NCBI RefSeq assembly: GCF_001194135.2
Contig: NC_069000.1
Span: 44,980,756 to 45,044,755, forward strand
Length of the DNA stretch: 64,000 nucleotides
Direction: 5' to 3'
Origin: Octopus bimaculoides
Taxonomy: Eukaryota
Part shown: piece by piece, positions 2,090 to 50,211 of the stretch
Numbering within the stretch: position 1 is the stretch's first letter
Layout of the letters: the number at the start of each line of letters is the position of its first letter
Notes under the pieces: model-generated
Database searches by the model: none
Seen by the model: only the letters and a program-made list of their open reading frames with translations
What the model was told of the DNA's origin: nothing
Made by a program: the position numbers and the translations under genes

Positions 2090-3400
2090 AGGGAAGTATA
2101 CATAGAATGTGGCACTAGCCATCAGACACCCTGTTCATCACCTCTTCCCAATTCTTATCCACCCGAAGGTCGGGACTAAACCAGACCTTGAGCAGTTTAA
2201 CTGGTCCGTCAGTCTAACGTCTAGTAGAGGTGGAGGTTGTCATGGATGGAACTGCTCGGGATAGCAGCACGTTTCTGCCTCCCCGACCAGACTCCCAGCA
2301 ACAAGCGCAAACTTTTGTGCTAACACCTTGGCCAGAATTGTAAACTGTATTTAGCAGAGTTATGGGCCAAAAATTCCCTAGCATGTCCCCATTGCTGGCA
2401 TCCTTTCTCAGCAGTGTTACACACCCTGGCTAACAGCACTAGGAACTCTCCCATTCTGCTGCCAGTTATTGTAGACATCTGCCAAGAAGCTACCAAACAA
2501 ATCTGGCATGAACAAACTGGGTAATTTGCAACTTGTGCAATTGCTCATTGCCTTCTGTATTTCAGTGGCTGTAATCAGCCTGATGCAGAACCTTGCGTCC
2601 ATTACTAAGAGCCATGGTAGGTCGTCCAGATATGAAGTAAACTCTGCTACTGTTGCCAACCCATCACCCTCCCTAAAAATCCCAGCAAAGTGCTGCTGAA
2701 AAGCCACGCATATCTGCTCCGAACCAAGTAGTACGTGCCTGTCCTGATCCATTAAATCTTCATGTTTTTGTTTTCATGTTTTGTCACTACCATTCAGGCC
2801 CATTGGATGGCTTCAGATCTTTCGCGTTTTAGTGCACAGGCCTGAGCTCTGACAACGCACCCTTCATGTTTCACCTTAAAGAAATGGTCAAGGGCCATTC
2901 TCACTGCTAACACATCGGTTGCCATTCCTTTACTAACAACCTCTTCCAGTTTGCTAACAAGTTCTCCTTCTAATCTATTTCTTTCTATTGCTAAATCTTT
3001 GCTAAACACTATTGATTCTACTCTAATTGCTCTCTTCACCAGTTGTTGATGATTGCCCCTGTCAACTACCACTTAACTACTTCACTAATCCAGTCGCTGT
3101 AGTCTTTGTGAGCCGGTAAGGACGCATTCAACTTCCAGTAACTGGGTCTCTGTCTACGGGTCCTATGTAAATCAACTGTGCCTATCACAAATTTGTGATC
3201 TGAGTAGCTGACCAATTTAAATTGTGAATAACCTATGCTATCCCTATCCTCTGACCTAACAAATAGTCTACCTTAATATGATCTGGATGACCCATTACCG
3301 TTGCTCCTTGTCCACATCGGGACATCAGGGAAATCCAGTCGGTACCTGACAGAAAGCTGGAAAGTCCAAAGGAGCCTGGGATCTAGGTTAGAAACCGGTT
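2090..3400 (-). mobile_element. Degenerate Tx1/L1-clade LINE ORF2 fragment (end of endonuclease, linker, start of RT)
   Basis: Minus-strand remnants SYSDHKFV, HFFKVKHEGCVVRA, ITATEIQKAM, LADVYNNWQQNGRVP..V and NFWPITLLN, with stops and frameshifts. Confidence 0.8.
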
Positions 3401-4387
3401 CTTTCTTTATTGGCAAGAAATCTTGAAAAACTGAATAATGACAGACATACATACATACAAATAGTGAAGCTTCATGTAGCAAACATGTGCAGCAGAATAG
3501 GGTGTAGCAAACGTGTGTAGTGGTGCTTAATGTAGTGACCATGGGCAAGGGAGCTGAATGTGGTAAACATATGCATTTGAGCTGGGTGTAGTGAAAATGT
3601 GCATTTGAGCTTGATTCTGTGAACATGGGTAGCATAGCTGAATGTAATGACTATATGTCAATGCAGATAACTTCCTGATGTTATTTAACAATTAGTTGTA
3701 GGAGGAGGAGGAGGAGGAGATGATGACTAACAACAACAGACTGGATAAGCATTTTGCAACACAAATCATTTCATCCAAGTGTCATCTCCGGTTTAAGTGA
3801 CAATCTTTTTTGTCCTACTTAGAACCACTGCGACATGTTCAGAAAGACACACACAAGCTCACCTACACAATCCCCTTCTTGCAACCAAAATATAGATTAC
3901 ATATCTCCTGGTCGTTCTCCCATTTGTTTCATATCACGATTTTCAGTATCTAAAGCTCAGCATTAGGATTAACACTAGGAACCTTTTACACAATCTCGTT
4001 GTTCTCAATTTAAAGAACACTTAGACCACTATGAAGTACTCTAAAGTACACATATCCAAACACAATCCTATTTAAGGTACATTTAAATCATCATATAACA
4101 CCCTACTTAAAAGTGAATACTTATAGATACATGTGTCCCCCCAACTGTGCTCAATTAATGAATATCCATTCCACTCCCCTGTTTCTTATTTAAATTCTAT
4201 TTACATCACATCATGTCTTTCCTTCCATTATCTCCAACTGAAATCATAATTTATACCATCCCTGTTTCCAATTTGAAGCAAACACATAACAGCATTCTTC
4301 TGTTTCCAATTCAAAGCATACTCTTACCGCTTCCTCTATTCCCAGTTAAAAATAGGTTTGTGTGTACATGCAATTATCTCATTCCAG

Positions 4388-4740
4388 GGTGAAAAACTAG
4401 AGGTAGTCGATAGCTTCCGCTATCTGGGTGACCAAGTTAGTAGTGGGGGTGGGTGCGCTGAAAGTGTAGCTGCTAGAATAAGAATAGCCTGGCCAAAGTT
4501 TAGAGAGCTCTTACCCCTGCTGGCGACAAAGGGACTCTCACTCAGAGTAAAAGGCAGACTGTATGACGCATGCGTACGAACAACCATGCTACATGGCAGT
4601 GAAACATGGGCTGTAACTGCTGAGGACATACGTAAGCTCGCAAGGAATGAAGCCAGTATGCTCCGTTGGATGTGTAATGTCAATGTGAATACCCGTCAGA
4701 GTGTAAGTATCTTGAGAGAAAAGCTGAACATTAGAAGCAT
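4388..4740 (+). mobile_element. RTE-clade LINE RT C-terminal fragment (cut by gap)
   Basis: LEVVDSFRYLGDQVSSGGGC..IRIAWPKFRELLPLL..KGRLYDACVRTTMLHGSETW, typical of RTE. Confidence 0.9.
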
Positions 4741-5649
4741 NNNNNNNNNNNNNNNNNNNNNNNNNNNNNNNNNNNNNNNNNNNNNNNNNNNNNNNNNNNN
4801 NNNNNNNNNNNNNNNNNNNNNNNNNNNNNNNNNNNNNNNNNNNNNNNNNNNNNNNNNNNNNNNNNNNNNNNNNNNNNNNNNNNNNNNNNNNNNNNNNNNN
4901 NNNNNNNNNNNNNNNNNNNNNNNNNNNNNNNNNNNNNNNNNNNNNNNNNNNNNNNNNNNNNNNNNNNNNNNNNNNNNNNNNNNNNNNNNNNNNNNNNNNN
5001 NNNNNNNNNNNNNNNNNNNNNNNNNNNNNNNNNNNNNNNNNNNNNNNNNNNNNNNNNNNNNNNNNNNNNNNNNNNNNNNNNNNNNNNNNNNNNNNNNNNN
5101 NNNNNNNNNNNNNNNNNNNNNNNNNNNNNNNNNNNNNNNNNNNNNNNNNNNNNNNNNNNNNNNNNNNNNNNNNNNNNNNNNNNNNNNNNNNNNNNNNNNN
5201 NNNNNNNNNNNNNNNNNNNNNNNNNNNNNNNNNNNNNNNNNNNNNNNNNNNNNNNNNNNNNNNNNNNNNNNNNNNNNNNNNNNNNNNNNNNNNNNNNNNN
5301 NNNNNNNNNNNNNNNNNNNNNNNNNNNNNNNNNNNNNNNNNNNNNNNNNNNNNNNNNNNNNNNNNNNNNNNNNNNNNNNNNNNNNNNNNNNNNNNNNNNN
5401 NNNNNNNNNNNNNNNNNNNNNNNNNNNNNNNNNNNNNNNNNNNNNNNNNNNNNNNNNNNNNNNNNNNNNNNNNNNNNNNNNNNNNNGAAACTCTGCCAAA
5501 TCAGACTGGAGCCTGGTGTTGCCATCCGGTTTCACCAGTCCTCAGTCAAATCGTCCAACCCATGCTAGCATGGAAAGCGGACGTTAAACGATGATGATGA
5601 TGATGATGATGATGATGATATATATATATATATATATACATACACACAT

Positions 5650-8230: not shown

Positions 8231-8400
8231 GTGCAAGAGTGGCTGAGTGGTAAGAAGCTTGCTTCCCAACCACATGGTTCCAGATTCAGTCTCACTGCGT
8301 GGCACCTTGAGCAAGTGACTTCTACTATAGGCTCAGGCCTTGTGAGTGGATTTGGTAGACAGAAACTGAAAGAAGCCTGTTGTATATATGTATGTGCGTG
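8231..8400 (+). mobile_element. tRNA-derived CORE-like SINE family A (other copies ~7130-7270, 20790-20930, 22880-23210, 39490-39640, 52650-52805)
   Basis: A box (tggctgagtggtaag), B box (ggttccagattcagtc), CORE-like ggcaccttgagcaagtgacttct; repeated many times in the window. Confidence 0.8.
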
Positions 8401-11400
8401 TGTGTTTGTCCCCCCAACATCGCTTGACAACCGATGCTGGTGTGTTCACGTCCCTGTAACTTAGTAGCTTGGCAAAAAAAACCGATAGAATAAGTACTAG
8501 GGTCGATTTGCTTGACTAAAGGTGGTGCTCCAGCATGGCCACAGTCAAAAATGACTGAAACAATATATATATATATATCACTCACACATAGACACATACA
8601 TGCAGTCAATAAAATACATATTTTTAAAGACACAAACACATGTATAAACACACAGAGAAGTTGGTGTTTAGTTTGTTTACACTATTTACAATGTAAACAG
8701 ATTCCAGAGTAATGTTTATCTAATGAGGTGTAGAGGGTGAATGATGAACAACAAAAGACAACCCTTCAGGGGCACCACCACTGCCTAAATCCTTCCCTAA
8801 TAAACCAGATTCAATTACTTGCTGAAACCAGTTCACTTCACACCACAGATCTTAATACTATTATGGAACGGCATGAATGTCATACATTCTTATTACTGTA
8901 GTCCTGTATTAGTTTGTGACCTCAAAGCTAATTAAGAATATATTTTATTTTTACCTTTTAGAGGTCAAAGGTCAGAGTGTACGACCCATTTTCAAGATCT
9001 TCTGACAAAGGCAGGAGCAAAGGAGTAAGATAGCTTCTAATTAGAGATCTGGCTTGTAGGTTTGCCATGGAATGAACTCTGCCAAAGTCATTGAAGAATT
9101 CAAGAATCAGTGGTGGTGGTGGTGTATTGGATTTAGTTTCTCACCAAAGAACTGGGGACAGATTCTAAGACAGGCTTCCACAGTTTCTGTGTGCCATCTC
9201 TTTTTGTTTTTCACTTGTAGTTGCCATCTACCAAATCAACTTACGAACCTTTGGTTGGCTCCAAGGCAATAGTCACACAGTGGGACTGAACCTGGAACCA
9301 TGTGGTTGCAAAATAAAGCTACTTACCACACAGCCATGCCTGCACCTTGCTCTAAGATACATACAAACATTAAAATTATTAAAAAATTCGTCTACAAAGC
9401 TCATATTATCTAGTTGGTACAAGGATCGTACACAGCTTTTGAAGCAATTGACTGAAGGGGTGGGGGTGGGGTTGGAGGTCTGCATCAGTTTACTTGAGTA
9501 CCTGCAGGTGCTGTAAATGGTATGGCCATGTTTTAGCTAGTCACCATCGTAGTTTTAACATCTACTTCTCTACATTTGCATGGCTCAGAAGGAGTTCATT
9601 GGGTCAGATTTTCTACAGCTATAATGTTTTTCCTGTTGCCAACTTTTACCTATTTCCAAGTAAAAATATTTCCCAGTGGCCAGACATGTTTTCGTGGAAG
9701 ACTGAAAACAAAGATCATTGCCTGGATGATGGTGACGCTCGTTTACAACTATCACATGATGTCAAAATCAGGAGACACTGACATCCACCCACCACACACA
9801 TTCTTTTACTTGTTTCAGTCATTTTACTGTGGTCATGCTGGAGCACCACCTTAAAGGGTTTTAGTCAAAGAAATCAACCCTGGGACTTATTCTTTGTAAA
9901 CCTAGTACATATTCTATCAGTCTCTCTCGCCAAACCGCTACGTTACAGGGACGTAAACACACCAACATAGGTTGTCAAGGCAGCTCCATTTAATTGAACA
10001 ATGCAATCATTACATCAATTTATTGGAAGAAAATACTGGTTACAAAGTGTCGCATAGTGGGACTGAACCCTAATCCACAAGCAATATTCTTACCCCCCCC
10101 CCACACACACACCTGCACATATACCTTCTTGCACAATGTCGCAAAAGGAGCTCTGAGAAAATGAGAACAATTTCTGTCGAAGCATTTATTTATTTATTTA
10201 AGATGACAGATCAAAATCTGTTTCATTTAATGATAAAAAGGGAATTATAAAAATAAAAAAAAATTATTAAATCCTACACTGGAGGACAACACTCCTTCCA
10301 CCACTCTTTCTCATATTATATAAACATGGCTCGGAGAAGCTTTCAGCTTTCTGTCACGAATTTGTTACTACTACTACTACCGCTTCAACAGCTATAAATT
10401 TAGAATTACAAACAGCATCCCTTAGTTCACACTAGTATAAAGAAGAGTTCTTCGTAGACTATCAGCACCAATTACCATATCTGTAAATAACATTAAACCA
10501 TACTATCATCGCCCGAAACCTATTTCTATGCTAAAAAGACGACCACTCGTCGATTTGAACACTCGTCAACAGGCTTGAAAGTACTTCCTGCTCCTCGTTC
10601 CAATATATAAACCAACCGACTTAACCTGACCAATTTTCTCGTGACACTACGACTCCTGCTACAAACTGCCTCATTCATTTCTTCTCTCTCTTTTCTGAAT
10701 GCCAGTTGTTTATTCATTCAGACAGGAGGAAGGAGGCTCCTTCGTTTCTACTGAAGATGAAAAAATTCTCAAGCAGGCTATGAGATTTCTACAAGCCGTA
10801 AGATTCCATATAATCCTTTAAGGGGAGCTGCGGTGTGTAAGTTACAGCAGGATTATCTGGAAGCAATTACAGTAAAGAAATCATTTCGTAATAGATCAGG
10901 TTACTGAATACTTGAACATGCACATAATGTGTGTGAGCTCCAGGAAAGGCTCTTCTCATTTCACAGAAGAAAGCTCCGACCAGATCAACACTCCCTTTGG
11001 CGTATCTGTGTCATCATATACGTAAATGGAATCGTTAATGGAACATGCAAAACTTCTAGAGAATGATTTAAATTACGTTCACGCCAGGCAAGGAAGAGAC
11101 CGAGCCCCTTGCGGACGCGACAGACGTCAAAGTATGTCTATCATTGACGACTTTTAGACAATCCAAAAGGAAGCAATAAATTACATCAGCTGTCGACCAG
11201 AGTAAAGAACGTCAGAGATAGAAACGATAGGATTTCCGTTGATATTTCTACCCCTTCATCCGGCAACCTTAACTGTACCGTAGAAACTCTCCAATGCCCG
11301 ACACTTTCTTAATCAACAAGCACTTGTTAAACTATCGTGTTTAAATTTGTAAATTCTATTTCTATTAAATTATAATCAACCTCCCAGTTAAGCCGTGCGC

Positions 11401-15261: not shown

Positions 15262-15993
15262 CTAATCACTAAACATCAATCAACGAGTGAAATGAACAAA
15301 TATAAACCGAATCACCGCAACTGACAGATATTAATCCGCACGAGCAGTTGATATAAAATAAAAAGAACACACACACACACACTTGCAAATTAGAGAAAAA
15401 TAATCCATGGAAATTTTCCAATTTACGACTTATAATAAATATTATTTTATCATATAATAAATTCTGTTAATTCCTAACATTTCTTAAAGGCAACTGAAAG
15501 AAAAATATTTCGATTTAACTTTTTACTTAATGTTTGCAATGTGGATTTCTATCTATACTTAAGTGTTGGCATTTGGTTTAAGTTCATGGACGTGGGCAAT
15601 CCCGAATTAATTTAGTGTCTCTTGTTTTTAAAGATATTGCAATTTCTTAACAATGTGGTGACTGTTTATTGAGTTTATCGATTATAATATTATATTTTAG
15701 CTGCGTAAAATCTTCAGTGTCATCTTTCATGCTTTAGTTTGTTGTTCCTAAGTCAAAGGGGCGTATTAAAAGAGAAAGAGAGAGAGTATGAAAACACTGG
15801 TGACAAGAAAGACGGACAGAAAGAAATGTCTGAATGGAGATGGTGCTATACCAATCGGTTCCAAGGAGTAGAGGCAACGGAGGTTGCAATAGGAAAGGGC
15901 AGAAAAGGAGACTACACCAGTAGGGGCCACGAAAGTTACAATAAAAACGGACAGGAAAGGAGACTGCACCTGTATGGGATAAAGGGGTCGGAG

Positions 15994-20065: not shown

Positions 20066-21579
20066 CATTTTATCTAGTTTCAGCTCATGAGCTGTGGCCA
20101 TGCTAGGGCACCACCATTTGGTGTTGCTACATAATTTTACTTCATGAATTTTACTTCAGGAATTGACATTTGGTGTATATATATTTATATTTATATTTGG
20201 TGCAAGAAAAAAAAACGAACAAAAAACAAAACATATAAACAACAATAAAAGAGCTCTGATTTATTAGAATATCAAGCATGATGAAAAATATTTAACACCT
20301 TGTATGCATACATACAGGTTGCAACGAGAAAGAAAAGACGTCCTGCATTTTACACATTTACAAATGTTTCAGTAGAATACACGCAATATGCATTAATTCA
20401 AATCAAGATGGCAAATGAAAAAGAATAGTAAGACATCAGCTCCCTAAGGATACCATTATCATCAACGGAACTTCACTAGTGTCAAACCAATGCCCATCTA
20501 AAATGCAGGAGGTTTTTCTGCTGCACCCAGTATATCCCATTTCATGACTAGAATTCTTAATAAAATATGCACAATGTTTCAATTTTGAAAATAATTACAA
20601 ATTTAGAGAGATTTCTTAAAATAACAAACTTTATCAATTATAAGTTTGGTGCTTGGAACATATCGAAAGTTTCCTATTTTTGAAATTAAATGTAAATGAT
20701 TTATAATTGGATGTTTTGTGATGTGGAATTAGAGATAGTTCTCAGGTGAATTGGTATCAAAAAGAAATACAAACATACATGTAGGCACAAGTGTGGCTGT
20801 GTGGTTAAGAAGTTTGCTTTGTAACCACAAGGTTTCAAGATCAATCTTACTGTGCGGCACCTTGGGAAAGTGTTTTCTACTTATAACCTTAGGCTGATCA
20901 ATGTGCCTTGTGAGTGAATTTAATAGACAAAAACATATATATTTGTATCTTTCTATCTATCTATCTATTTATGTGACCATCTATCTGACTCTCTCTCTAT
21001 CTCTCTATCTACACACACACACACACGTATTCAGACACACATATATTCAGACACACATATATACTATTCAGTCATTGGTCAGTGCTCCAACATGGGCACC
21101 ATATTGAAAAGTTTAATTAAATGAATTGACCCCCAGCATTTATTATTTTTTTAATGGTTAGCAGCAGGAAAGGCATTGGCAGCTTTTTGCCATTACTTTT
21201 GTTTTTATTCAGCCTGATGAATATGCTTGAAGGAAACAGAGCTTGTTTATTTCAAACACTAGAAGTTTTTGTACAAACATGAAACTTGAGTTGCTGCAAA
21301 AATGTCATTAACATACTATATAAGGATTTAACTAAACTCTCACGTGATCTGAGTGCTCTCCCTTGTTGAAAGTTATTCAACAATAACAACATACATAATA
21401 CATACATACACACGCATACACATACACACATACATACATACAAATACGTGTACATGCATTCTATTCAAACTGCTTCAGTCTATCTACTGCTGATATATAC
21501 ATACATAGACATAGATGCACACACACACACACACACATATACATATACACATTCACAGATATACAAATATACACATACA

Positions 21580-21639
<60 letters not shown>

Positions 21640-21960
21640 AATATGCATATTTATGTATATATGTGATTATTTATGCATGTGTGTGTGTGTGTAGACACGC
21701 CTGTACTCTAAAATAGTGGTCTACTCAATATGCAAACCAAATATTGATGTGAAAGAAATAAAGTGTTTTGATTATAGATGTTTTTGCATAATGATACACC
21801 ATGTGTAACTTGAAAATATATATTCTGGGAGAACACTACATTAAAATCTCTAACGAGAAAACCAAATTTGTCAAATGTGAATCAGAGTCAGGGCTTATGA
21901 CTAACATTCCCTGTGTGATCAATTAGTCTTTATACATTTTCAGTCATTCATATTAATCAT

Positions 21961-22763
21961 TTAACTATGGTGTGAATTCCATGACTGTATGTCACTATTC
22001 AAATCGACAATTTCCCTGCTTTTAGGATTCTCTTCCTCACTATTTTCAGAACTGTCTTTCACACTATTTTCAGAGCTGTCTTCCAGGAGTCTTTCAGAAT
22101 TGTCCTCCTCACTTATATCAGAACTGTCCTCAACTTTAATATCAGAACTGTCAACAAGTTTGTTCTCAAGAATGTTCTCCAAACTATCTTCCAGTCTACT
22201 TTCAAAAGTGTCATCTGATTTTCTCTCAGAACTGTCTTCCAATTTGCTTTCAGAGCTATCCTCCAATATGCTCTCAAAATTGTCCTTCAGTTGACTCTCA
22301 AAACTGTCCTCTAACCTGTTCTCAAAACTGTCCTTCAGGTGACTCTCAAAACTGTCCTCTATTTGACTCTCAGAACTTTCTTCAAATATTCTTTCAAAAC
22401 TGTCCTCCATTTGACTCTCAAAACTGTCCTCCATTTGACTCTCAGAACTATCTTCCATTTGACTCTCAGAACTATTTTCCATTTGACTCTCAGAACTGTC
22501 ATCCAATCTGTTCTCAGAACTATCCTCCAGTTGGATATCATTGCTGTTCTCCATTCCAATATCAAAACTGTTCATTTTGTCTTCTGTCTGTCTGGAATCC
22601 AAAGCATTTCCAATTTTCAAAGACCCATTTTCGTCTTGTTTTGGATCTTCCTCCAAAATTTCAGTAAGGTTAATGTTTGATATATTGGCGTTTACCAATA
22701 TTTCAGAAACATTCAAGGTCCAAGGTGCTCCTTGGAATTCTTCAGGACTTATTTTTCCATCTC
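21961..22763 (-). CDS. Secreted EF-hand/acidic-repeat protein, last coding exon (end of EF-hand 2 plus Asp/Glu/Ser-rich repeats)
   Basis: tcatacctag|GA GAT GGA AAA; phase 1 matches the upstream exon, giving DADKNGDGKISPEEF; 803 nt open to TAA at 21961. Confidence 0.9.
22042..22533 (-). repeat. Coding 24-nt tandem repeat (~20 octapeptides plus one half unit)
   Basis: QLEDSSEN/RLDDSSES/QMENSSES/QMEDSSES/QMEDSFES/.../SVKDSSEN. Confidence 0.95.
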
Positions 22764-23114
22764 CTAGGTATGACAAAAAAAAAGAAAAGAGAAAAAAATT
22801 AATTTTGTTACAATCAAGGGTCACAGCAACATGTAATGTTTTAGTTAAGGGTCACAACAACAGGATTTTCAATGAATTGATATGTGTGGTTGTGTGATTG
22901 AGAAGCTGGCTTCCCAACCATATGGTACCTGGTTCAGTCTCACTACATGGCACCTTGGGCAAGTGTGTTCTATAGGTGCAGGAGTGGCTGTGTGGTTGAG
23001 AAACTTGCTTCTCAGGTTCAATCCCACAGTCCAGCATCTCAGGTGAATATTCTCTACTATAACCCCAGGCCAACCAAATCCTGTGAGTGGATTTGATAGG
23101 TGGAAAAAGAAGCC

Positions 23115-23161
<47 letters not shown>

Positions 23162-23326
23162 TGCGGGAGTGGCTGTAAAGTAAAAAGTTTGCTTCCCAAC
23201 CACATGGTTCCTAGATTTCAGGGGTCAGCCCGCAGAACCTGCAACAAATAGAAGCCCTACTTTTAGGGTCCACATGGTCACAAATTAAGGTCCACTTGTT
23301 TGGGAAAATACCTGACAAGAACTTAC

Positions 23327-23537
23327 CATTTTTATCTGCATCTTTAAAAGCTTCCTTAGCGTTCCGTCTTGCACCAGTTGTTTTGATTAATTCCTGCAGA
23401 CTGATGAAGTTATCGTTAATATTGTTGTCATAGCGTGAGAAGTTCTTTGGAAGAGGCACCGGTCTAAATTCTTCACTGTCCTTTTTGGGGTTGACCAGGA
23501 ACTGTTCTACAGCTTTGGGGTCCTTTATTGTTTCAAT
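23327..23537 (-). CDS. Secreted EF-hand/acidic-repeat protein, middle exon (EF-hand pair)
   Basis: ttcttacag|ATT..AAT G|gtaagt; 211 nt; IETIKDPKAVEQFLVNPKKDSEEFRPVPLPKNFSRYDNNINDNFISLQELIKTTGARRNAKEAFKDADKN. Confidence 0.9.
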
Positions 23538-23679
23538 CTGTAAGAAACCAAAACAAGAAATAAGTACTTTTTTTCTATTTTAATATAAAATCAGAGAGGA
23601 GGGGAGGGTGGGGCAATGCTATTAATCTTTGAAGATGTTAAATGATTAACATGACTGATGATTGATGTTAATACTAATG

Positions 23680-23735
<56 letters not shown>

Positions 23736-23964
23736 TCTTTTACTTGTTTCAGTCATTTGACTGCGGCCATGCTGGAGCACCGCCTTTAGTCAAGCAAATC
23801 GAGCCCAGGACTTATTCTTTGTAAGCCTAGTACTTATTCTATTGGTCTCTTTTGCTGAAACGCTAAGTTACAGGGATGTAAACACAGCAACATTGGTTGT
23901 CAAGCGATGTATTAATATTTATACAACAGTAGGAACTACTACTACTGCTGCTGCTGCTGCTTCA

Positions 23965-24021
<57 letters not shown>

Positions 24022-24136
24022 TCTTCTTCTTCTTCTTCTTCTTCAATGGTAGCACAACCTCCCCCATCCCCAGTCTTCCCAAGAGAGTCTCCAGTTAAAG
24101 GAAAACAGAATCCATTCTTGAAAACTCATTACCGAC

Positions 24137-24256
24137 CTTTACAGATTCAGCTTTGTGATCTCTCTTGAAACGTGGAACTTTGACGGGTTGCTGCCATGAT
24201 AGACATATCCATATTAGACAAAAGAAGCACACCAGGCCTGAGTGATGTTTTACCAT
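24137..24256 (-). CDS. Secreted EF-hand/acidic-repeat protein, first coding exon (signal peptide and RFKR site)
   Basis: catttcag|TAAAAA ATG..AAG|gtcggt; MVKHHSGLVCFFCLIWICLSWQQPVKVPRFKRDHKAESVK; phase 0 matches the next exon. Confidence 0.8.
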
Positions 24257-24919
24257 TTTTTACTGAAATGAACAGAACATTCAAGAGAACATAAGTGGAT
24301 TTCTTGTGGGAACTGTGGGGTGTGTGTGCGCGTTGTGTATGTGTGTGTGTGTTTGTTGTGAGTTTTGTGTATGTGTGTTTGTTTCAGTGAGTGTGTTTGT
24401 GAATGTGTGAGCATGTGCATGTGTGAGTATTTATGTGTATGTGAATGTGTGTGTGTATGTGTATGTGTTTGTGCATGAGTGTGTGTTTGTGTGTTTCTGT
24501 GTGTGCTTGTGTGTGTTTGTGTGTGCATGCGTATGTGTGTGTTCCTAATATATAAAAAAAAGTGGGATATTCATGGTGTGAGATATCTTTCATTATAACA
24601 CAGGTCTGCTTGATTGAGATGAGACTAAAGAGCTACAGCAGCAGCAGCAGCAGCAGCAGGTGCAGCAACAACATCAGCAGGTGCAGCAAGAGAAGGCTGC
24701 AACAGTAATAACAACATAAACAACAACATCACCATCAACAGCAAGCACAGTAACAACAACAAGATGCCAACACCGATTCCATGATTCCATCAGACACGAC
24801 AAGATGTCAAACAGCCAGAATTTCTTTATTCCATGAGGGAAAAAAATCCCCAAAACATGGCAGATCTCCAAGCGTTCCTTCAAATTTTTAATGAAAATAT
24901 TAAAAAGAATGTTACGTAT

Positions 24920-34890: not shown

Positions 34891-37800
34891 ATACAGTAAA
34901 ACTGAAAAGAATGGAAGCAATTTCGGTCGGTCTGCTGCGAAAGTAGGAACCGAATATGACTCACAGAAAGAAGAAAGAAGGAGGAGGAGGAGGAAAAGAA
35001 GAGAGAAGAAAATAAGAAAAAAAAGAAAAAGAGACGTGGATGGGGGGAAGAAGGGGAGGGGGNNNNNNNNNNNNNNNNNNNNNNNNNNNNNNNNNNNNNN
35101 NNNNNNNNNNNNNNNNNNNNNNNNNNNNNNNNNNNNNNNNNNNNNNNNNNNNNNNNNNNNNNNNNNNNNNNNNNNNNNNNNNNNNNNNNNNNNNNNNNNN
35201 NNNNNNNNNNNNNNNNNNNNNNNNNNNNNNNNNNNNNNNNNNNNNNNNNNNNNNNNNNNNNNNNNNNNNNNNNNNNNNNNNNNNNNNNNNNNNNNNNNNN
35301 NNNNNNNNNNNNNNNNNNNNNNNNNNNNNNNNNATCATCATCATCATCATCATTATTATTATTATTATTTACTTTTTTCCGTATGGTTTGGGCATGGGTA
35401 TGTGGGATATTTGCGGGTGGGGGGGGGGATATATGGTGTGTGTGCTGTTGGTCTAAGTTCAGCCCAATATTTTTAATTGTAGTGGTGGTGGTCACAGTGA
35501 TGGTGTTGGTAGTAGTATTAGTAATGGTAGTTGTGGTGGTGGTAGTGTGATAGTAGTAGTAGTAGTAGTAAAGGGGATGGTTGTGGTAGTTGTGATTGTA
35601 GTAGTAGTAGTAATAGCAACAGTTGCAGTGAGTGATGGTAGTAGTAGTAGTGGTGGTAGTAATACACACAAGACTTGTGTGTCTGTGTTCGTCCCTCCAC
35701 CATCACTTGACAACCGATGTTGGTGTGTTTACGTCCCCGAAACTTAGCGCTTTGGCAAAAAGAGACCTAAGTCTACAAAGAATAAGTCTTGGTGTCAATT
35801 TGTTCAACTAAAAGTGGTGCTCCAGCATGGCTGCAATCAAAATGCCTGAAACAAATAAAAGAACATAATATAGCAAATGACAGCTCCTCAAGGTGCCATA
35901 CAGTGGGACTGAACCTGAAACCATATGGCTGCAAATTGAGTTTCTTAAGTACAAACCCATGCCTTCGAATATTTACAAAAAATAACACCCCTATCAAAAA
36001 AAACAAAAAACAAAAAAAAACAACAACAGAGAACAAAGCGTGAAATGTTTCTTTAATAATTTATTATCATTTAAATAAAAAAAAAGAAAGAAACACAACA
36101 AAACATCCACAGGTAGTTAGTGTCAATAACAACAACAACATGAATGTTCCTAACAAAAGTGTGAGATAGGTCGTCATCCAAATATTCTATGTTGAAGTGC
36201 TGATATTGCACTCAAGCGGCATCGAATAAAGACCCTCTCTTCTGCATGAAGGGTCATTATGATGTCTTGTGTATAAGTTTAGAATCTAGATATGGTGGGA
36301 ATGGTGAGAGAGAAGAGGTTATTAGATAGGTGTATAGCTATTTGCATACATACACACATATATAAATATACATATGTATAGGTATATACACATGTATGTT
36401 TATGTGTGTGTGTGTGTGTGAGTATATCAAAGTAGCACAATTTTCATGAAACACTACCTGGTATATATGTTTTAAATATTTTTTCAATAATGTTTTTGGT
36501 TTAAAAAAAATATTAAACCATTTATATATGAATATATATATATATATATATATACACACAGATATATGCACACACATATATATATATATGTATGTGTGTG
36601 TGTATATATATACACACACACATACACACATTTCACTCTGGGTAAGATTTGAAAGCACAGCACAACCAAATTTTTCAGCAATATGAGAGTATTAAGGATG
36701 ACTTCTAAGACAGACTCAGAGATTAGAAATCTGGAGGTGGGTGGAGAAACAGCAGACTACATCGACCCCCCCACCCCTGTACTTAACAACAAGTATCATA
36801 TCCCCCCCCCCGGCTGGACAAAACGAGATGTAAACTAAAACAACAAAAAGGAAAAGTTTCATTAAAAACAGCAAAATATTGGTTCTGGAAGTGGGTAGGA
36901 GGTAGTCAGACGAGTAACCCAACCTCCTCGTTATCAGCTAAGAAACGAAACCTTTCCACCATAGAGAGGATTTCACTAACAACATACCTCTGGTGAAATC
37001 ATTATCATTTTAATATCCCCCTTTCCATGCTTGCTTGGGTCAGGTGGAATCTGTTGAGGCAGATTTTCCATGGCTGGATGTCTTTCCTGTCACCAACCCT
37101 CACCTGTTTCCTCAGCAAGGTGATATCTCCCCCCCCCCACCTAGGCCTAATGTGTTTTTTGTGGAAGATTTGAAATGAACAGCATTGCTTTTATGATGAT
37201 GATGATGATGGTGCTTAATTACAAACATCATCTAATGTCAAGACATGGGTACACATACACATGATGGGCTTCTTTCAGTTTCCATTCACAAGGCTCTGGT
37301 TGGTCTGGGGCGCATAGTGGGACTGAACCTGTAGCCACATGGCTGGAAAGCAAGCTGCCTAAACCACTCAGCCGCGTTTACACTTTCAAGCAATAACTAT
37401 TTACTAACAAACCTTACAGGATATCTTTACTACAGGGATTAAGGAAATAATACTTGTTCTGTGACGTGGTTTTCATAGAGATTAAAGATTAAGGATTATT
37501 TATGATACGTCATCTCCATCAGTTAATTAACTAACTTGAGTTGAGATTCAAAGTAACAGCAACAGTAAATATCTTGGACAACTGTGATAAATAATGGTTT
37601 TGGAGGTTTCTCCTGGTTTTGCTGGTTCTGGAAAAAAGACAAAACAAAACAAAACAGATAAACATAAATATAAACATTTCATTGCAATAATGATGATGAC
37701 GATAATGATAATAATAATAATAATAATAATAATGACGATGACGATGATGATGATAATTTCAATAGTAAAACTAATTGATGTTGTATATTTTCTGTATAAA

Positions 37801-40421: not shown

Positions 40422-43400
40422 TTCAGCATTAAATAAGGGGGGTTTTGATGCTTTAGAGGCCTTAAATATAAAATACTGAAAATGGAAAGCCTCATACAAT
40501 GTGAAAGGAAAAAAATTTAATAACCTTTATATTTCAAGCACAACAGCCCATCATCAGGAACAAATGAATTAAAGAAATGTGAGTCTACATAGTAAATTAG
40601 CGATGTTTGGTCAGTACTCTATAGACTTAGTACTTCTGATGACAGGCCTTTGTGCCTGAAATATATAAAGGATATTAAACTTGTATTGTAAGATGCTCTC
40701 CATCTTCCTTATTTTGCTATTTTACTTCCGTATCACAATGGTTCAAGCAAGCTGCAATTCTCTTTTTAAAAGTGCATGGTGCACCACAGCACTCTGGTGT
40801 ACATGTGTGAGAGTCACTGGCAACAAGATACATACCCTGTATGATATCCTAGTCATACCCTCCTATCATTTCTCAGACACAGTCGTCTAATTACTCCAAG
40901 TTGGCATCAACAAAGAGACCATCTAGCAACCTGATAATTCTAGGCAAACAGACTTAAAGTGGCACCTACCAAAACCCACTGTGCCCCTTCTTACCAGTGC
41001 TAACAGAGAACATCAAAGACAACTGATTCTCACATTAAACAACATGGAACATAAACACAAAATAATAAAGTATTAGGAATTAGATGCAACATTTTTACAT
41101 TAACAGAACATGTGGTAAGGAAAGTAAAACAACACATAAACATACTTTGAACACTTGCAGGAACCATATTTGGTCAAATTCAAAGAATCAACAACAATGT
41201 TATACAAACAAACATATTAAATCCATTATAAAAAGCACCTGTGCTGGTTCCACATAAAAAGCACCCTGTACACTCTGTAAAGTGGTTGGTATTAGGAAGG
41301 GCATCCAGCTGTAGAAACCATGCCAAAACAGACAACTGGAGCCGGGTACACCTCTCTGGCTTGTTAGCTCTTCTGTCAAACCGTCCAACCCATGCCAGCA
41401 TGGTAAACAGACATTAAATGATGATGATGATTATGCTGGTCCTGCTTGGGTTGTTTTGCGAGGGTCACAGTTTGATGCCACAGCAAGCTCCAAGCTTCCC
41501 AATCTCAGTCACAGCATGTACACTGACCACCACACCACACCACACACATCTGCAACATCCCAAGACTCTTCCAAAATGCCTTCCTCAGACCATTCTCCTC
41601 TCCTATCAGATCTTACCCACACTTAAACAGCTGCAGTAACATCAATAACTGTCACAACTGCGACATGCACAATCACTGCCAAACGCATCTGTAACATTTC
41701 CTGTAACATCAAATATCAAGTCACAATCAAATGGAATTTGTAGTTGTGGCCATGCCAGTGCTGCCTGACTGGCTCCTGTGATGGTGGCACACAATAAGCA
41801 CCATTCATGCATGATTCGTTACCAGTACCGCTAGACTGGCTCCCTGTGCCAGAGGCATGTAAAAAGCACCATCCGAATGTGGTTGATGCCAGGGCCACCT
41901 GACTGGTTCCCGTGCCAGTGGCACGTAAAAAGCACCCCCTACACTCTTGGAGTGGTTGGCATTAGGAAGGGCATCCAGATATAGAAACCTTACCAGATCA
42001 GATTGGAGCCTGGTGCGGCCTCCTGGCTTGCCAATCCCCAGTCAAACTGTTCAACCCATGCCAGCATGGGAAACGGACGTTAAACGATGATGATGATGAT
42101 GATGATCCCAGGAAATTCCTGCAACATCTTTCTCAGATCACCCTGTCTCTCCAACCAGATCCTAATCACACATAAATAACTGCAGTAACATTGGTAACCT
42201 TCCCAACTACCAATGATAAGTGGAAACGTACAGTAATGGCTGGCAGCAAACAAGTGGCAGAAGCATTAGAGTGCTGGTTAGAATGGCTTGCAGTAGTTGT
42301 TCCAACTGTCCGCATGTGAGTTCAAATCCTGGCAAGGTTGTTTTCTGCCTTTTATCTTCTCTGGGTCAAAAAAAAAATGTTATGTCAGAATGTGTAGCAT
42401 GGTCAGCAAATGGGAGCTGACAGGATGTAACTGGGAAGAGGGACTTAGGGGTCTGTCATAAGATTTAGGACTTTTCAATTAGGGGCCGATGTGGGGTTTA
42501 TGACAACCACTACCAACACATACTACGACTGTTTACTATACTGTGGCATTAACATACTATATATATATAACTGTTATCCATCACAACACTACTACAACCA
42601 CATATACCACCACAGTACTATGTCACAAACACATGGCACTAGCATTCATGACCACCTCAACACTACAACACCAACACATACTACTCACCGTTGGACATAA
42701 ATTAACTCAAGACTCAATTTTGGAAACATGCAGTTAATGATAATTAATGATAAAATATGATAATTAAGGGTTGTATATTTGACGAAAGGAGGGAGGGGAT
42801 GAGGTAGATGTAATAATGAGAGGGGGAGTGAGACGGGAGGGCGAAGGGTACATGAAAAGCTGTTGGGGCTGGATTGTAAGCTGGGAAAAAAAACTGGAAA
42901 AGAGCGTGGAGAATAGCAAATGTTTATTAATTATTATGAGGTTAACGAGGGAGTAACTGCAATGAAAATACATTTAAAATGGACATGAGCAAGTGAGGAT
43001 GAAGAGGAGGAGTCATGCTGCAGAGATATACGAGAAAAAGAATATTAAAGGACCATGGATAATATTTCAAAGAAAAAAGTGAAAAAAAGTAAAGAAAAAT
43101 TTTTAAAAAATAAATAAAAACAAAAAAAAAGGAGCTTGTTTCGTTCTCAAAGCCATTTCACTCACCAATCAGGATTAGAATAACCTGCAGAAAGAGAAGT
43201 TTGTGGGGTGTGAGCTAGCATAGAGTGAAACAAAGTGAACAGGTAGATGAAAGATAGAAACCTCCACAGGTGGCAAGACAGGGTTTGGTATCTGTCCCCT
43301 CGCTGAGGTGTTAGGTCCTTTTCCTTTCATTGTAATATAAACACATAAAAGAAGTTTGTTTGGTAAACTTAGCTGGAAAAAAAAAAACACACATAAAAGA

Positions 43401-50108: not shown

Positions 50109-50211
50109 CTGCATGCAAGCGTTATCAACAATCATATTATTGAATTCAATTTGTGGATATTCTTCTGCAACATTTTTGCAACATTCTAGAAACAGTCCAT
50201 CACCAAGTTTC
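50109..50211 (-). CDS. IDH3G: IDH3 gamma exon 8
   Basis: tttgtag|[35 protein letters not shown]|gtaagg. Confidence 0.97.

What the first reader, a model, noticed from the sequence alone, without database searches (positions are those of the whole stretch)
21961..24262. Unnamed secreted EF-hand protein with propeptide and long acidic tail: candidate cephalopod biomineral or extracellular Ca2+-binding matrix protein
Seen: three phase-compatible GT-AG exons (120+211+803 nt) give 377 aa. There is a hydrophobic/Cys-rich N-terminus, RFKR at residues 29-32, a non-canonical EF loop (DNNINDNFISLQE), a canonical EF loop split by an intron (DKNG|DGKISPEE), four N-glycosylation sequons (NVS, NIS, NLT, NGS) and ~200 D/E/S-rich residues with no TM segment or ER-retention motif. 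Established: RxKR is a furin consensus, and secreted EF-hand proteins and D/E/S-rich proteins are recurrent mollusc CaCO3 matrix components. Inference: a processed, secreted Ca2+ binder, e.g. for statolith/statoconia or gland secretions; I do not recognise an existing name. The ORF track shows only the last exon.
Basis: partly seen in the sequence, partly recalled or inferred. Interest (0 to 1): 0.85.

Follow-up and report, generated by a model that had tools for sequence, protein, structure and literature searches.

The report
Octopus secreted acidic EF-hand protein gene
This is a real, already-annotated but unstudied Octopus bimaculoides gene for a probably secreted, very acidic calcium-binding protein; it belongs to an unnamed protein family found across many invertebrate phyla, and nothing yet ties it to biomineral formation.

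Summary
The three-exon, minus-strand model is correct. Its 377-aa product is identical to RefSeq XP_014771710.1, "dentin sialophosphoprotein-like", from Octopus bimaculoides. The same exons, GT-AG sites and open frame occur in O. vulgaris, with dN/dS 0.29. A Sepia esculenta mRNA aligns without gaps across both junctions.

The protein has four parts:
- a signal-peptide-like N-terminus;
- a confidently folded EF-hand pair (pLDDT above 90), with one 13-residue variant loop and one canonical loop;
- a cluster of N-glycosylation sequons;
- a tail of 21 tandem 8-residue units, E-D-S-[S/F]-E-S-Q-[L/M], carrying 20 S-x-E motifs.

New here: the EF-hand domain (FxPVxxPxxFxxYD…TGAxEN…DxNGDG…EFxxAPW) defines an unnamed family of secreted, mostly acidic proteins. 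Members occur in molluscs, a brachiopod, nemerteans, an annelid, a horseshoe crab, a hemichordate and a sea cucumber. All nine genomes examined share a phase-1 intron in codon 4 of the second EF loop.

The RFKR site is RFKG in O. vulgaris, so propeptide processing is doubtful. The family occurs in phyla that do not mineralise. No proteomic or expression evidence links the protein to statoliths or shell. The best reading is a secreted, high-capacity Ca2+-binding glycoprotein, probably phosphorylated, whose tissue role is unknown.

The parts
24137..24262 (-). First coding exon. It has 6 nt of 5' leader after the acceptor AG (24264-24263), containing an in-frame TAA at 24262-24260. The ATG at 24256 follows, then codons 1-40: the signal-peptide-like MVKHHSGLVCFFCLIWICLS and RFKR at residues 29-32.
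   Evidence: O. vulgaris has the same acceptor 6 nt before the homologous ATG. AF2 predicts a helix at residues 5-20.
23538..24136 (-). Intron 1 (phase 0, GT...AG, 599 nt). It is filled with (TAA)n, (ACT)n and (CTT)n microsatellites.
   Evidence: The homologous O. vulgaris intron is 1378 nt.
23327..23537 (-). Coding exon 2 (codons 41-110 plus the first base of codon 111). It holds a conserved pre-domain segment, the FRPVPLPKNF motif, the 13-residue EF loop 1 (23429..23391) and the first four positions of EF loop 2 (from 23336).
   Evidence: It is 95% identical to O. vulgaris, the most conserved exon.
22764..23326 (-). Intron 2 (phase 1, GT...AG, 563 nt). It splits codon 4 (Gly111) of EF loop 2. 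It contains a (TA)20 run and several copies of a short interspersed-repeat-like motif.
   Evidence: The same intron position and phase occur in 7 of 7 distant relatives examined and in O. vulgaris.
21961..22763 (-). Coding exon 3 (the rest of codon 111 through codon 377, plus TAA at 21963..21961). It holds the rest of EF loop 2 (to 22738), the APW cap (W125 at 22722..22720), the sequon cluster N128/N137/N142/N156, the octad-repeat tail and a conserved C-terminal 23 residues.
22720..23468 (-). Family-defining EF-hand-pair domain, F64-W125, interrupted by intron 2.
   Evidence: AF2 gives pLDDT 90-97 for residues 70-125, with a beta-bridge between position 8 of the two loops. Foldseek finds about 2 A rmsd to troponin C and calmodulin C-lobes. 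hhalign to calmodulin gives 97% probability. Alignment A2 shows invariant D77, E89, D108 and E119, and F64, P66, P70, F73, Y76 and W125 in at least 90% of sequences.
22024..22527 (-). Tandem array of about 21 units of 24 nt / 8 aa (residues 190-357), consensus E-D-S-[S/F]-E-S-Q-[L/M]. The first 15 units are regular and the last 6 are degenerate.
   Evidence: TRF finds period 24/48/72 over 22019..22571. The register is shown. There are 20 S-x-E motifs against 8.9 +/- 2.5 in shuffles. dN/dS is 0.31 against O. vulgaris, with in-frame indels of 24 and 12 nt.
37532..37627 (-). Putative non-coding 5' exon, inferred only from homology to an exon of the O. vulgaris gene model.
   Evidence: It is 87% identical to L007:15706-15811, with the acceptor CAG and donor GT kept. 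A 1-nt and a 9-nt indel break the reading frame used by the O. vulgaris model, so it is read as UTR. No transcript evidence from this species was available.
41617..41702 (-). Putative first (non-coding) exon region, inferred only from homology to the first annotated exon of the O. vulgaris model. The donor GT is at 41616-41615 and the 5' end is unknown.
   Evidence: 89% identity, donor kept. This is inference, not shown.

Best explanation
This is an expressed protein-coding gene of Octopus bimaculoides (chromosome CM046620.1). Its product enters the secretory pathway and works as an extracellular, or secretory-compartment, calcium-binding glycoprotein.

Proposed mechanism, step by step:
1. Inferred: the N-terminal signal peptide is cut after about Ser20.
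2. Shown by fold prediction and homology: residues 64-125 fold as one compact EF-hand pair. Loop 2 (DKNGDGKISPEE) has every canonical ligand. Loop 1 (DNNINDNFISLQE) is a 13-residue variant with one inserted residue, yet D, N, D and E still sit at the ligand positions.
3. Inferred: at the millimolar Ca2+ outside cells this pair would be permanently loaded. It would then act as a Ca2+-stabilised structural or docking module rather than a switch.
4. Inferred: the four sequons just after the domain are glycosylated.
5. Inferred: the roughly 170-residue octad tail gives low-affinity, high-capacity cation or mineral-surface binding. The tail region as a whole (residues 187-377) has 63 D/E against 15 K/R, and the protein carries 20 S-x-E sites, concentrated in the octad units, that fit the Golgi casein kinase (Fam20C-type) consensus.

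The EF domain is inherited from an old, unnamed bilaterian family of secreted acidic EF-hand proteins. The octad tail is an octopod-lineage elaboration. Which tissue or secretion uses the protein is not known.
For: Gene reality:
- Exact identity to four RefSeq XP records.
- Locus placed on GCA_001194135.2.
- O. vulgaris keeps the exons, splice sites and frame, with dN/dS 0.29 overall, 0.19 in the EF domain and 0.31 in the tail.
- The Sepia esculenta orthologue P0005 was assembled from several larval RNA-seq runs and aligns gap-free across both junctions.

Secretion:
- The hydrophobic 10-mer score is 3.05 at residues 8-17, with no later hydrophobic segment and no KDEL.
- 27 of 32 relatives have the same N-terminal hydrophobic start.

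EF pair:
- Pfam EF-hand_1 scores 35.2 bits against a cut-off of 25.4.
- AF2 pLDDT is above 90.
- Foldseek and hhalign match calmodulin and troponin C lobes.

Family:
- A full HMMER scan of 1.84 billion representatives gave about 30 single-domain relatives at E from 1e-18 to 1e-7.
- Their taxa were named.
- The domain motif is shared.
- The phase-1 intron is shared in 9 of 9 genomes.
- Most relatives are acidic, with pI 4.0-4.8.

Tail.
Against: - No signal-peptide predictor, no transcript data from this species and no protein-level data were available. Secretion, glycosylation, phosphorylation and Ca2+ binding are all inferred.
- Loop 1 is non-canonical and may not bind Ca2+.
- The tail is predicted mostly disordered (pLDDT below 50). 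Helices of modest confidence (60-78) cover residues 220-280, so its state is unknown.
- The octopus proteins are singletons in the 15-billion-protein collection. I found no assembled octopus transcript, so I cannot say where or how strongly the gene is expressed.
- Lack of KDEL does not exclude residence in the ER or Golgi; MCFD2 and Cab45 also lack it (from my own knowledge).
Confidence: 0.65

Rival explanations
1. One reading: the protein is a matrix component of a cephalopod CaCO3 biomineral (statolith or statoconia, or stylet or shell-sac product). The acidic phosphorylated tail would bind crystal faces or stabilise amorphous precursor, and the EF pair would anchor it.
For: - pI is 4.1-4.3, D+E is 25% and there are 20 S-x-E motifs.
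- Acidic secreted proteins with two EF-hands were found in larval shell matrices of Pinctada and Crassostrea (PMC6231486).
- EF-hand domains recur in all lophotrochozoan shell proteomes compared in PMC13425148.
- Haliotis SMP5, a small secreted EF-hand protein, is mantle- and veliger-enriched and is induced on shell repair (PMC10741955).
- The Sepia orthologue is readily assembled from whole-larva RNA-seq, a stage that builds cuttlebone and statoliths. This is only suggestive.
Against: - The conserved family is present in nemerteans, a hemichordate, a horseshoe crab and Owenia, which make no such minerals.
- No paper in the searchable library lists this protein or its accessions.
- The argonaut eggcase matrix study has no EF-hand entry in its main text.
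- S-x-E enrichment is confined to Octopus, the cephalopod lineage with the least mineral, and is absent from Sepia.
Confidence: 0.2
2. The protein acts inside the secretory pathway rather than outside the cell. It would be a luminal Ca2+ store or a cargo-condensing or sorting factor of gland or neurosecretory cells, by analogy with Cab45, MCFD2, granins and calsequestrin. Ca2+-dependent self-association of the acidic tail would pack secretory content.
For: - The signal peptide plus EF pair plus polyacidic region is the same parts list as those proteins.
- The small family members (112-144 aa: signal, short linker, EF pair) have the MCFD2-like layout.
- A dibasic site is present in O. bimaculoides and Sepia.
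- The wide phyletic spread fits a basic cell-biological role.
Against: - No sequence relationship closer than generic EF-hand was found. MCFD2 and CREC proteins were not among the best 60 PDB sequence matches or the best 50 fold matches.
- There is only one dibasic site, and it is lost in O. vulgaris.
- The family was not found in vertebrates or insects among the best 150 hits, which would be odd for a core trafficking factor.
Confidence: 0.15
3. The protein is an intracellular calmodulin-like Ca2+ sensor with a mis-called start, so the hydrophobic N-terminus is not a signal peptide.
For: The best sequence and fold matches for the domain are calmodulin, troponin C and CaBP1.
Against: - Only one EF pair is present, with a linker 6 residues shorter.
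- An in-frame TAA sits two codons before the ATG.
- The hydrophobic start is conserved across phyla.
- N-x-S/T sequons cluster after the domain.
- The O. vulgaris N-terminal extension is not conserved. It is broken by a 1-nt indel and the TAA in O. bimaculoides.
Confidence: 0.03
4. It is not a functional gene. On this view it is a chance ORF through a coding-looking minisatellite, or a decaying pseudogene.
For: - The last exon is largely a 24-nt tandem repeat, which by itself keeps frames open. Antisense ORFs of 101-118 aa also run through it.
- Flanking non-coding DNA is also 80-90% identical between the two octopus species, so nucleotide identity alone proves little.
Against: - dN/dS is 0.19-0.31.
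- Indels are in-frame only.
- Splice sites are conserved.
- The orthologous mRNA is expressed in Sepia.
- The domain and intron position are conserved across Bilateria.
- The protein is identical to a RefSeq model.
Confidence: 0.02

Closest known systems
Calmodulin / troponin C-type EF-hand pair (Pfam EF-hand_1 PF00036, EF-hand_7 PF13499)
   Same: - A helix-loop-helix pair with a canonical second loop and a short beta-bridge between the loops.
- hhalign gives 97% probability to the calmodulin C-lobe.
- Foldseek gives about 2 A rmsd over 54-58 residues.
   Different: - There is a single pair only.
- The inter-loop linker is 6 residues shorter.
- The entering helix of EF1 is replaced by a Pro-rich FxPVxxPxxF segment, and the pair is followed by a conserved APW.
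- The protein is secreted rather than cytosolic.
- EF1 has 13 residues.
SPARC/BM-40/osteonectin extracellular calcium-binding (EC) domain, Pfam PF10591
   Same: - It is an extracellular EF-hand pair.
- From my own knowledge of the SPARC structure, its first loop carries a one-residue insertion, as in the D-x-x-P-x-D-G-[FY]-[IL]-S form of many relatives here.
- It combines a low-affinity acidic region with a high-affinity EF pair.
- 10 of 31 relatives hit PF10591 over profile positions 58-112, which cover both EF-hands, at 18.9-21.4 bits.
   Different: - All those scores are below the gathering cut-off of 22, and the octopus protein itself gives no hit.
- There is no follistatin or Kazal module and there are no cysteines after the signal peptide, so the EF2 disulfide is absent.
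- SPARC is not among the top 50 fold matches.
Mollusc shell-associated secreted EF-hand proteins: Pinctada EFCBP (Huang et al. 2007, cited), the acidic two-EF-hand larval shell proteins of Pinctada and Crassostrea (PMC6231486), and Haliotis SMP5 (PMC10741955)
   Same: Each is described as having a signal peptide, EF-hand motifs and D/E richness with low pI (4.3-4.4 for the larval proteins).
   Different: - Homology is untested, because none of those sequences was available to me.
- The reported EF positions of SMP5 (36-48, 56-68, 112-124) do not match the 31-residue loop spacing here.
- Those proteins have shell or mantle evidence; this one has none.
Dentin sialophosphoprotein and other vertebrate SIBLING/SCPP phosphoproteins (the source of the RefSeq name)
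   Same: - A secreted, highly acidic, Ser-rich repetitive region.
- It is dense in S-x-E/S-x-pS kinase motifs (20 S-x-E).
- It is presumably disordered.
   Different: - There is no sequence homology.
- The repeat is an 8-residue EDS[S/F]ESQ[L/M] unit, not (DSS)n.
- Pfam finds only EF-hand families.
- From my own knowledge, DSPP has no EF-hand and belongs to a vertebrate-specific gene cluster. The name reflects composition only.
Luminal EF-hand proteins MCFD2, Cab45 and the CREC family
   Same: A signal peptide plus EF-hands plus acidic stretches. The small relatives (112-144 aa) share the MCFD2 layout.
   Different: - No specific similarity was detected.
- CREC proteins have six EF-hands and often HDEL; this protein has one pair and no retention signal.

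Membership tests
EF-hand superfamily (Pfam clan EF_hand) | A 12-residue loop with D/N/S ligands at positions 1, 3 and 5, Gly at 6, a hydrophobic residue at 8 and Glu at 12 | tested here: met
   DKNGDGKISPEE (residues 108-119). EF-hand_1 scores 35.2 bits against a cut-off of 25.4, and EF-hand_5 and EF-hand_6 are also above their cut-offs.
EF-hand superfamily (Pfam clan EF_hand) | Two helix-loop-helix units packed as a pair | tested here: met
   AF2 pLDDT is 90-97 over residues 70-125, with an inter-loop beta-bridge at residues 85 and 115. Foldseek matches troponin C and calmodulin lobes. hhalign gives 97%. The Pfam pair model EF-hand_7 is below its cut-off for this protein alone (23.7 against 30).
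EF-hand superfamily (Pfam clan EF_hand) | Measured Ca2+ binding | not testable with these tools
   This needs recombinant protein and ITC, 45Ca overlay or NMR.
Unnamed bilaterian secreted EF-hand-pair family (defined in this report) | Domain signature F-x-P-[VIL]-x-x-P-x-x-F-x-x-Y-D ... T-G-A-x-E-N ... D-x-[ND]-G-D-G ... E-F-x-x-A-P-W | tested here: met
   The octopus protein has FRPVPLPKNFSRYD...TGARRN...DKNGDG...EFQGAPW. It is 40-59% identical to 26 relatives over 69 residues. E-values run from 1e-18 to 1e-7 against 1.84 billion proteins.
Unnamed bilaterian secreted EF-hand-pair family (defined in this report) | Phase-1 intron in codon 4 of the second EF loop | tested here: met
   Seen in O. 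bimaculoides, O. vulgaris, Mizuhopecten, Lingula, Lineus and Glandiceps, and Tachypleus, Apostichopus and Littorina. I did not check whether unrelated EF-hand genes share this position.
Unnamed bilaterian secreted EF-hand-pair family (defined in this report) | An N-terminal signal peptide, no membrane anchor, and an acidic low-complexity flank | tested here: met
   Hydropathy heuristic only. 27 of 32 members have a hydrophobic 10-mer scoring at least 2.0 within the first 45 residues. All but one doubtful model (P0136) have no later hydrophobic 19-mer above 1.3. Most have pI 4.0-4.8. SignalP was not available.
SPARC / BM-40 family (EC domain PF10591) | A match to the SPARC_Ca_bdg model above its gathering score | tested here: not met
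   The octopus protein gives no hit at E <= 1. Relatives reach 18.9-21.4 bits against a cut-off of 22.
SPARC / BM-40 family (EC domain PF10591) | A follistatin-like/Kazal module and disulfide-bonded EF-hand 2 | tested here: not met
   No such Pfam hit was found. All three cysteines lie in the signal peptide at residues 10, 13 and 18.
SPARC / BM-40 family (EC domain PF10591) | A first EF loop lengthened by one residue | tested here: met
   Octopus, Sepia and about a third of relatives have 13-residue loop 1, and many have the D-x-x-P-x-D-G form. This is a resemblance, not membership.
Dentin sialophosphoprotein / SIBLING | Sequence homology to DSP/DPP, with (DSS)n repeats | tested here: not met
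   Pfam returns only EF-hand families plus a non-significant DUF7874 hit (E = 0.47). The repeat unit is EDS[S/F]ESQ[L/M].
Mollusc shell-matrix proteins | Physical detection in a biomineral extract | not tested
   No proteome data could be searched with the sequence. Accession and name searches of the paper library found nothing.
Proprotein-convertase substrates | A conserved R-x-K/R-R or K-R site at the propeptide boundary | tested here: inconclusive
   The site is RFKR in O. bimaculoides, RFKG in O. vulgaris and RYKKR in Sepia.

The most novel reading that the evidence does not exclude
The EF-hand domain marks a previously unnamed, ancient bilaterian family of secreted acidic calcium-binding proteins. 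The family is recognisable by its motif and by a conserved phase-1 intron inside the second Ca2+ loop. It may be distantly allied to the SPARC EC domain, and it was not detected in vertebrates or insects here. In octopods the family would have acquired a 21-unit S-x-E octad tail, making it an invertebrate functional analogue of the vertebrate Fam20C-phosphorylated mineral-regulating phosphoproteins, used in the statocyst or stylet.
Probability: 0.15. Interest if true: 0.6.

Novelty: new member of a known kind. Interest (0 to 1): 0.35.

Why it matters
For this gene alone the result is modest. An automatic and misleading RefSeq name ("dentin sialophosphoprotein-like") can be replaced by an accurate description, and the claim of a biomineral protein with a furin-processed propeptide is scaled back.

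The more useful product is at the family level. A compact, easily recognised secreted EF-hand-pair domain occurs from sea cucumbers and acorn worms to horseshoe crabs, nemerteans, brachiopods and molluscs. It has a shared intron position and has no curated family and no studied member. If some of the "acidic EF-hand" proteins reported in larval shell proteomes belong to it, they would gain an evolutionary context. Cephalopods, with their statoliths, cuttlebone and available genome editing, would be a practical place to test what such proteins do.

Tried and rejected
1. The word-indexed protein search with residues 1-188 found nothing, and with the domain profile found only 5 proteins. This was a sensitivity limit of the tool, not absence. 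The exhaustive HMMER scan found the family.
2. I recalled a SPARC EC relationship from the 13-residue loop. hhalign to a from-memory human sequence gave 14%. Foldseek showed no SPARC in the top 50. Pfam PF10591 hits in relatives are sub-threshold. I kept this as a resemblance only.
3. I checked for tandem paralogues in the window. tblastn with 27 family domains hit only this gene's own exons.
4. Literature look-ups by accession, by the RefSeq name plus octopus, by statolith/EF-hand and by cuttlebone/EF-hand found nothing about this protein. Supplementary tables of the two most relevant shell-proteome papers are not held, so I could not test identity with pfu_aug2.0_3796.1_22455 or CGI_10012241.
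5. The N-terminal extension in the O. vulgaris model and the different first exon in the O. sinensis model were rejected as annotation artefacts. In O. bimaculoides the frame is closed by a TAA and a 1-nt indel.
6. I considered a coiled-coil reading of the octad tail. Hydrophobic residues at i and i+4 with period 8 do not fit a 3.5-3.67 residue periodicity, and AF2 confidence is low.
7. The antisense ORFs through the repeat (101-118 aa) were dismissed as repeat artefacts.


Full report
**1. The observation**

Reading the minus strand of 21700-24500 and splicing 24256..24137, 23537..23327 and 22763..21961 gives 1134 nt, or 377 codons plus TAA. Both introns begin GT and end AG behind pyrimidine tracts.

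- the hydrophobic Cys-containing start;
- RFKR at residues 29-32;
- DNNINDNFISLQE at 77-89;
- DKNG|DGKISPEE at 108-119, split after the first base of the Gly111 codon;
- the sequons, of which there are six rather than four;
- a C-terminal half that is 58% D/E/S, with no hydrophobic segment and no KDEL.

The mechanical ORF list shows only the last exon, as 21961..22824. That ORF is the longest in the window that is not an N run or a microsatellite.

**2. Is it a gene?**

An exact-sequence look-up finds the 377-aa protein in NCBI as XP_014771710.1, XP_014771719.1, XP_014771728.1 and XP_014771734.1. The name given is "dentin sialophosphoprotein(-like) [Octopus bimaculoides]", and UniRef calls it "EF-hand domain-containing protein". 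The locus lies on GCA_001194135.2, chromosome CM046620.1, near 45.0 Mb.

Orthologues exist in O. vulgaris (P0166) and O. sinensis (P0167). In the O. vulgaris genome (L007) the same three exons are found with the same GT/AG boundaries and an intact frame of 373 codons, but the introns are 1378 and 3358 nt instead of 599 and 563.

Flanking and intronic DNA is itself 80-90% identical between the species, so identity alone is weak evidence. The informative points come from the Nei-Gojobori dN/dS values:

| Region | dN/dS |
|---|---|
| Whole protein | 0.29 |
| EF domain | 0.19 |
| Repeat tail | 0.31 |
| Signal/pro region | 0.51 |

In addition, the only indels are in-frame (24 nt and 12 nt).

A 421-aa orthologue, P0005, is assembled from several Logan RNA-seq runs. 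Two of those runs are cited in Sepia esculenta larval transcriptome papers. P0005 aligns without gaps from residue 25 to 127 of the octopus protein, which spans both exon junctions. I could not examine octopus RNA-seq reads directly.

**3. Gene limits**

The first coding exon begins at an acceptor (AG at 24264-24263) 6 nt before the ATG. The first three bases after the acceptor are TAA, in frame. O. vulgaris has the same acceptor, but its model reads through into two upstream exons, adding 46 residues.

The homologous segments lie in the window at about 41642-41617 and 37627-37532 with their splice sites preserved. A 1-nt indel and the TAA close that frame in O. bimaculoides. I read them as non-coding 5' exons and read the O. 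vulgaris extension as an artefact. The O. sinensis model has an unrelated first part. This is inference from homology only.

**4. Anatomy of the protein**

*Residues 1-20.* A short basic n-region (MVKHH), a 14-residue hydrophobic core, and C-L-S|W, which obeys the -3/-1 rule. AF2 draws a helix at residues 5-20.

*Residues 21-63.* This stretch includes RFKR and a segment conserved with Sepia (VKIETIKDP against KVETITDP).

*Residues 64-125.* This is the only confidently folded part, with pLDDT 90-97. It has the short beta-bridge between position 8 of the two loops (residues 85 and 115) that is typical of paired EF-hands.
- Pfam calls EF-hand_1, EF-hand_5 and EF-hand_6 on loop 2 above their cut-offs. 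The pair model is below its cut-off.
- The family profile aligns to the calmodulin C-lobe at 97% probability with a 6-residue shorter linker.
- Foldseek gives troponin C, calmodulin and CaBP1 lobes at about 2 A over 54-58 residues, with modest E-values because the domain is small.
- Loop 1 has 13 residues. The bridge position implies that the extra residue lies in the first half of the loop, leaving D77, N79, D82 and E89 at ligand positions (inference).

*Residues 126-186.* These carry four of the sequons.

*Residues 190-357.* These are 21 tandem units of 8 residues (24 nt; TRF periods 24/48/72) with consensus E-D-S-[S/F]-E-S-Q-[L/M]. The protein holds 20 S-x-E motifs against 8.9 +/- 2.5 in composition-preserving shuffles. 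The excess comes from the repeat itself, so the motifs are not independent events. AF2 gives mostly pLDDT below 50 here, with helices of modest confidence at residues 220-280.

*The last 23 residues.* These are identical in the three Octopus species.

**5. Relatives**

The word-indexed search missed them. The exhaustive HMMER scan of 1.84 billion representatives returned 501 hits. Most are multi-EF-hand proteins matching only the loops.

About 30 proteins match as a single stretch covering residues 30-60 to 125-135. They share a clear signature: F-x-P-[VIL]-x-x-P-x-x-F-x-x-Y-D, loop 1, E-L-x-x-x-T-G-A-x-E-N-x-x-x-A-F, loop 2, E-F-x-x-A-P-W.

Named sources:

| Group | Species |
|---|---|
| Cephalopod | Sepia |
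| Gastropod | Littorina saxatilis |
| Bivalves | Mytilus coruscus, Mizuhopecten yessoensis |
| Brachiopod | Lingula anatina (mis-named calcineurin B) |
| Nemerteans | Lineus longissimus, Tubulanus polymorphus |
| Annelid | Owenia fusiformis |
| Chelicerate | Tachypleus tridentatus |
| Hemichordate | Glandiceps talaboti |
| Holothurian | Apostichopus japonicus |

All are "uncharacterized" or carry composition-derived names.

Family-wide features:
- 27 of 32 start with a hydrophobic signal-like segment, and none has a retention motif.
- Only one doubtful model (P0136) has a later membrane-like segment.
- Most have pI 4.0-4.8, with D/E-rich low-complexity regions before or after the domain.
- No Pfam family other than the generic EF-hand models covers them.

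Mapping seven of these proteins onto their genomes shows an intron at the same place and phase as octopus intron 2: after the first base of the codon at position 4 of loop 2. This holds for Mizuhopecten, Lingula, Lineus, Glandiceps, Tachypleus, Apostichopus and Littorina. Together with the signature, this argues for one gene family dating to the bilaterian ancestor. I did not run the control of checking how common that intron position is in unrelated EF-hand genes.

**6. Lineage-specific and doubtful features**

The octad tail is shared by the three Octopus species, with single-unit indels. It is absent from Sepia, whose tail is E/D/K/G-rich without the repeat and without S-x-E excess. Other phyla also lack the excess, apart from a small one in Mytilus.

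The RFKR site is RFKG in O. vulgaris and RYKKR in Sepia. A convertase cut is possible in O. bimaculoides but is not a conserved feature.

**7. Mechanism**

Shown here:
- the gene structure, conservation and purifying selection;
- the EF-pair fold prediction;
- the canonical second loop;
- the acidic repeat.

Inferred from established knowledge:
- Sec-dependent export.
- N-glycosylation.
- Phosphorylation of S-x-E by a Fam20C-type Golgi kinase. The consensus comes from work on vertebrate Fam20C, cited from my own knowledge.
- A constitutively Ca2+-loaded EF pair in high-Ca2+ extracellular fluid.
- Low-affinity, high-capacity cation or mineral binding by the tail.

I commit to [quoted passage not shown], with confidence 0.65.

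**8. The biomineral proposal**

Points in favour:
- the protein's composition;
- acidic two-EF-hand proteins in larval shell matrices (PMC6231486);
- EF-hand domains in all lophotrochozoan shell proteomes compared (PMC13425148);
- mantle- and veliger-enriched SMP5 in abalone (PMC10741955);
- ready assembly of the Sepia orthologue from larval RNA-seq.

Points against:
- the family's presence in phyla without such minerals;
- the S-x-E tail being specific to the least mineralised cephalopods;
- no mention of this protein, its accessions or an EF-hand entry in the cephalopod matrix literature I could search.

I rate this reading at 0.2. An intracellular-lumen role (Cab45-, MCFD2- or granin-like) gets 0.15, a cytosolic sensor 0.03 and a non-gene 0.02.

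**9. Comparison with known families**

It is a member of the EF-hand superfamily: the loop and pair tests were met, and Ca2+ binding was not testable.

It resembles the SPARC EC domain in being extracellular, in the lengthened first loop and in loop spacing. Ten of 31 relatives touch PF10591 across both EF-hands at 18.9-21.4 bits. Membership nevertheless fails, for these reasons:
- the scores are below the cut-off, and the octopus protein gives no hit;
- there is no follistatin module and there are no cysteines;
- hhalign gives 14% to a from-memory SPARC sequence;
- no SPARC appears in the fold hits.

It is not a DSPP relative. The RefSeq name is compositional. Homology to EFCBP, SMP5 or the larval shell EF-hand proteins could not be tested.

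**10. Verdict**

The sequence is already in databases but is uncharacterised.

The added value is the recognition of an unnamed, widely distributed invertebrate family with a conserved intron, and of the octad S-x-E tail as an octopod elaboration. Novelty: new member of a known kind (secreted acidic EF-hand proteins). Interest: 0.35.

Noticed in passing
window 22764-23326 and 23538-24136 (introns of this gene); also 20701-20900: Intron 2 holds a (TA)20 run and at least three copies of a roughly 55-nt motif (…GGTTGGGAAGC…CACACAGCCACTCC…) that recurs just downstream of the gene, so it looks like a short interspersed element. Intron 1 is largely (TAA)22, (ACT)28 and (CTT)9 microsatellites.
   Followed up: no
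window ~41750-42106 and ~8234-8563: Two interspersed repeats of about 350 nt each match many separate places (at least 8 and 5) in the 56-kb O. vulgaris locus at 75-83% identity. They are probably abundant octopus SINE- or MITE-like elements.
   Followed up: no
window 49971-50312 (minus strand); possibly also 53059-53484: An ORF fragment (…[25 protein letters not shown]…) gives a weak Pfam Iso_dh hit (19.7 bits, E = 5e-4). The upstream neighbour on the same strand is probably an isocitrate dehydrogenase (NAD-type) gene. The second fragment gave no Pfam hit.
   Followed up: partly
window 2417-2752 and 4358-4740: ORF fragments here look like retrotransposon (reverse-transcriptase C-terminal) remnants by eye, but they gave no Pfam hit. 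One abuts an assembly gap.
   Followed up: partly
window ~4740-5480, ~35040-35350, ~57330-57560, ~61170-61860, ~62400-63400: Runs of N (assembly gaps) produce long artefactual ORFs of X in the ORF list.
   Followed up: no
L007 (O. vulgaris OX597833.1) 10001-10027 and 15707-15811; P0167 (O. sinensis): The O. vulgaris model adds 46 N-terminal residues from two upstream exons that are not open in O. bimaculoides. The O. sinensis model replaces the signal-peptide exon with an unrelated, retroelement-like segment. Both look like annotation errors that hide the signal peptide.
   Followed up: yes
P0005 cluster (Sepia esculenta) compared with P0001, P0166 and P0167: The cuttlefish orthologue appears as 10 near-identical sequences on more than 30 RNA-seq-derived contigs. 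Each octopus protein is known only from its genome annotation. This may reflect higher expression in cuttlefish larvae, or only sampling and assembly problems with the repeat.
   Followed up: partly
L010 (Lineus longissimus OU342998.1): The nemertean family member lies between a CLCA/VWA gene and an astacin metalloprotease gene, both secreted or extracellular. The scallop member sits next to an F-box gene. No conserved synteny is evident.
   Followed up: no
window 21989-22294 (+), 22339-22680 (+), 22541-22897 (+): Antisense ORFs of 101-118 aa run through the 24-nt repeat array (…LSELSS… and …LTLRT… periodic peptides). They are by-products of the repeat, not genes.
   Followed up: yes
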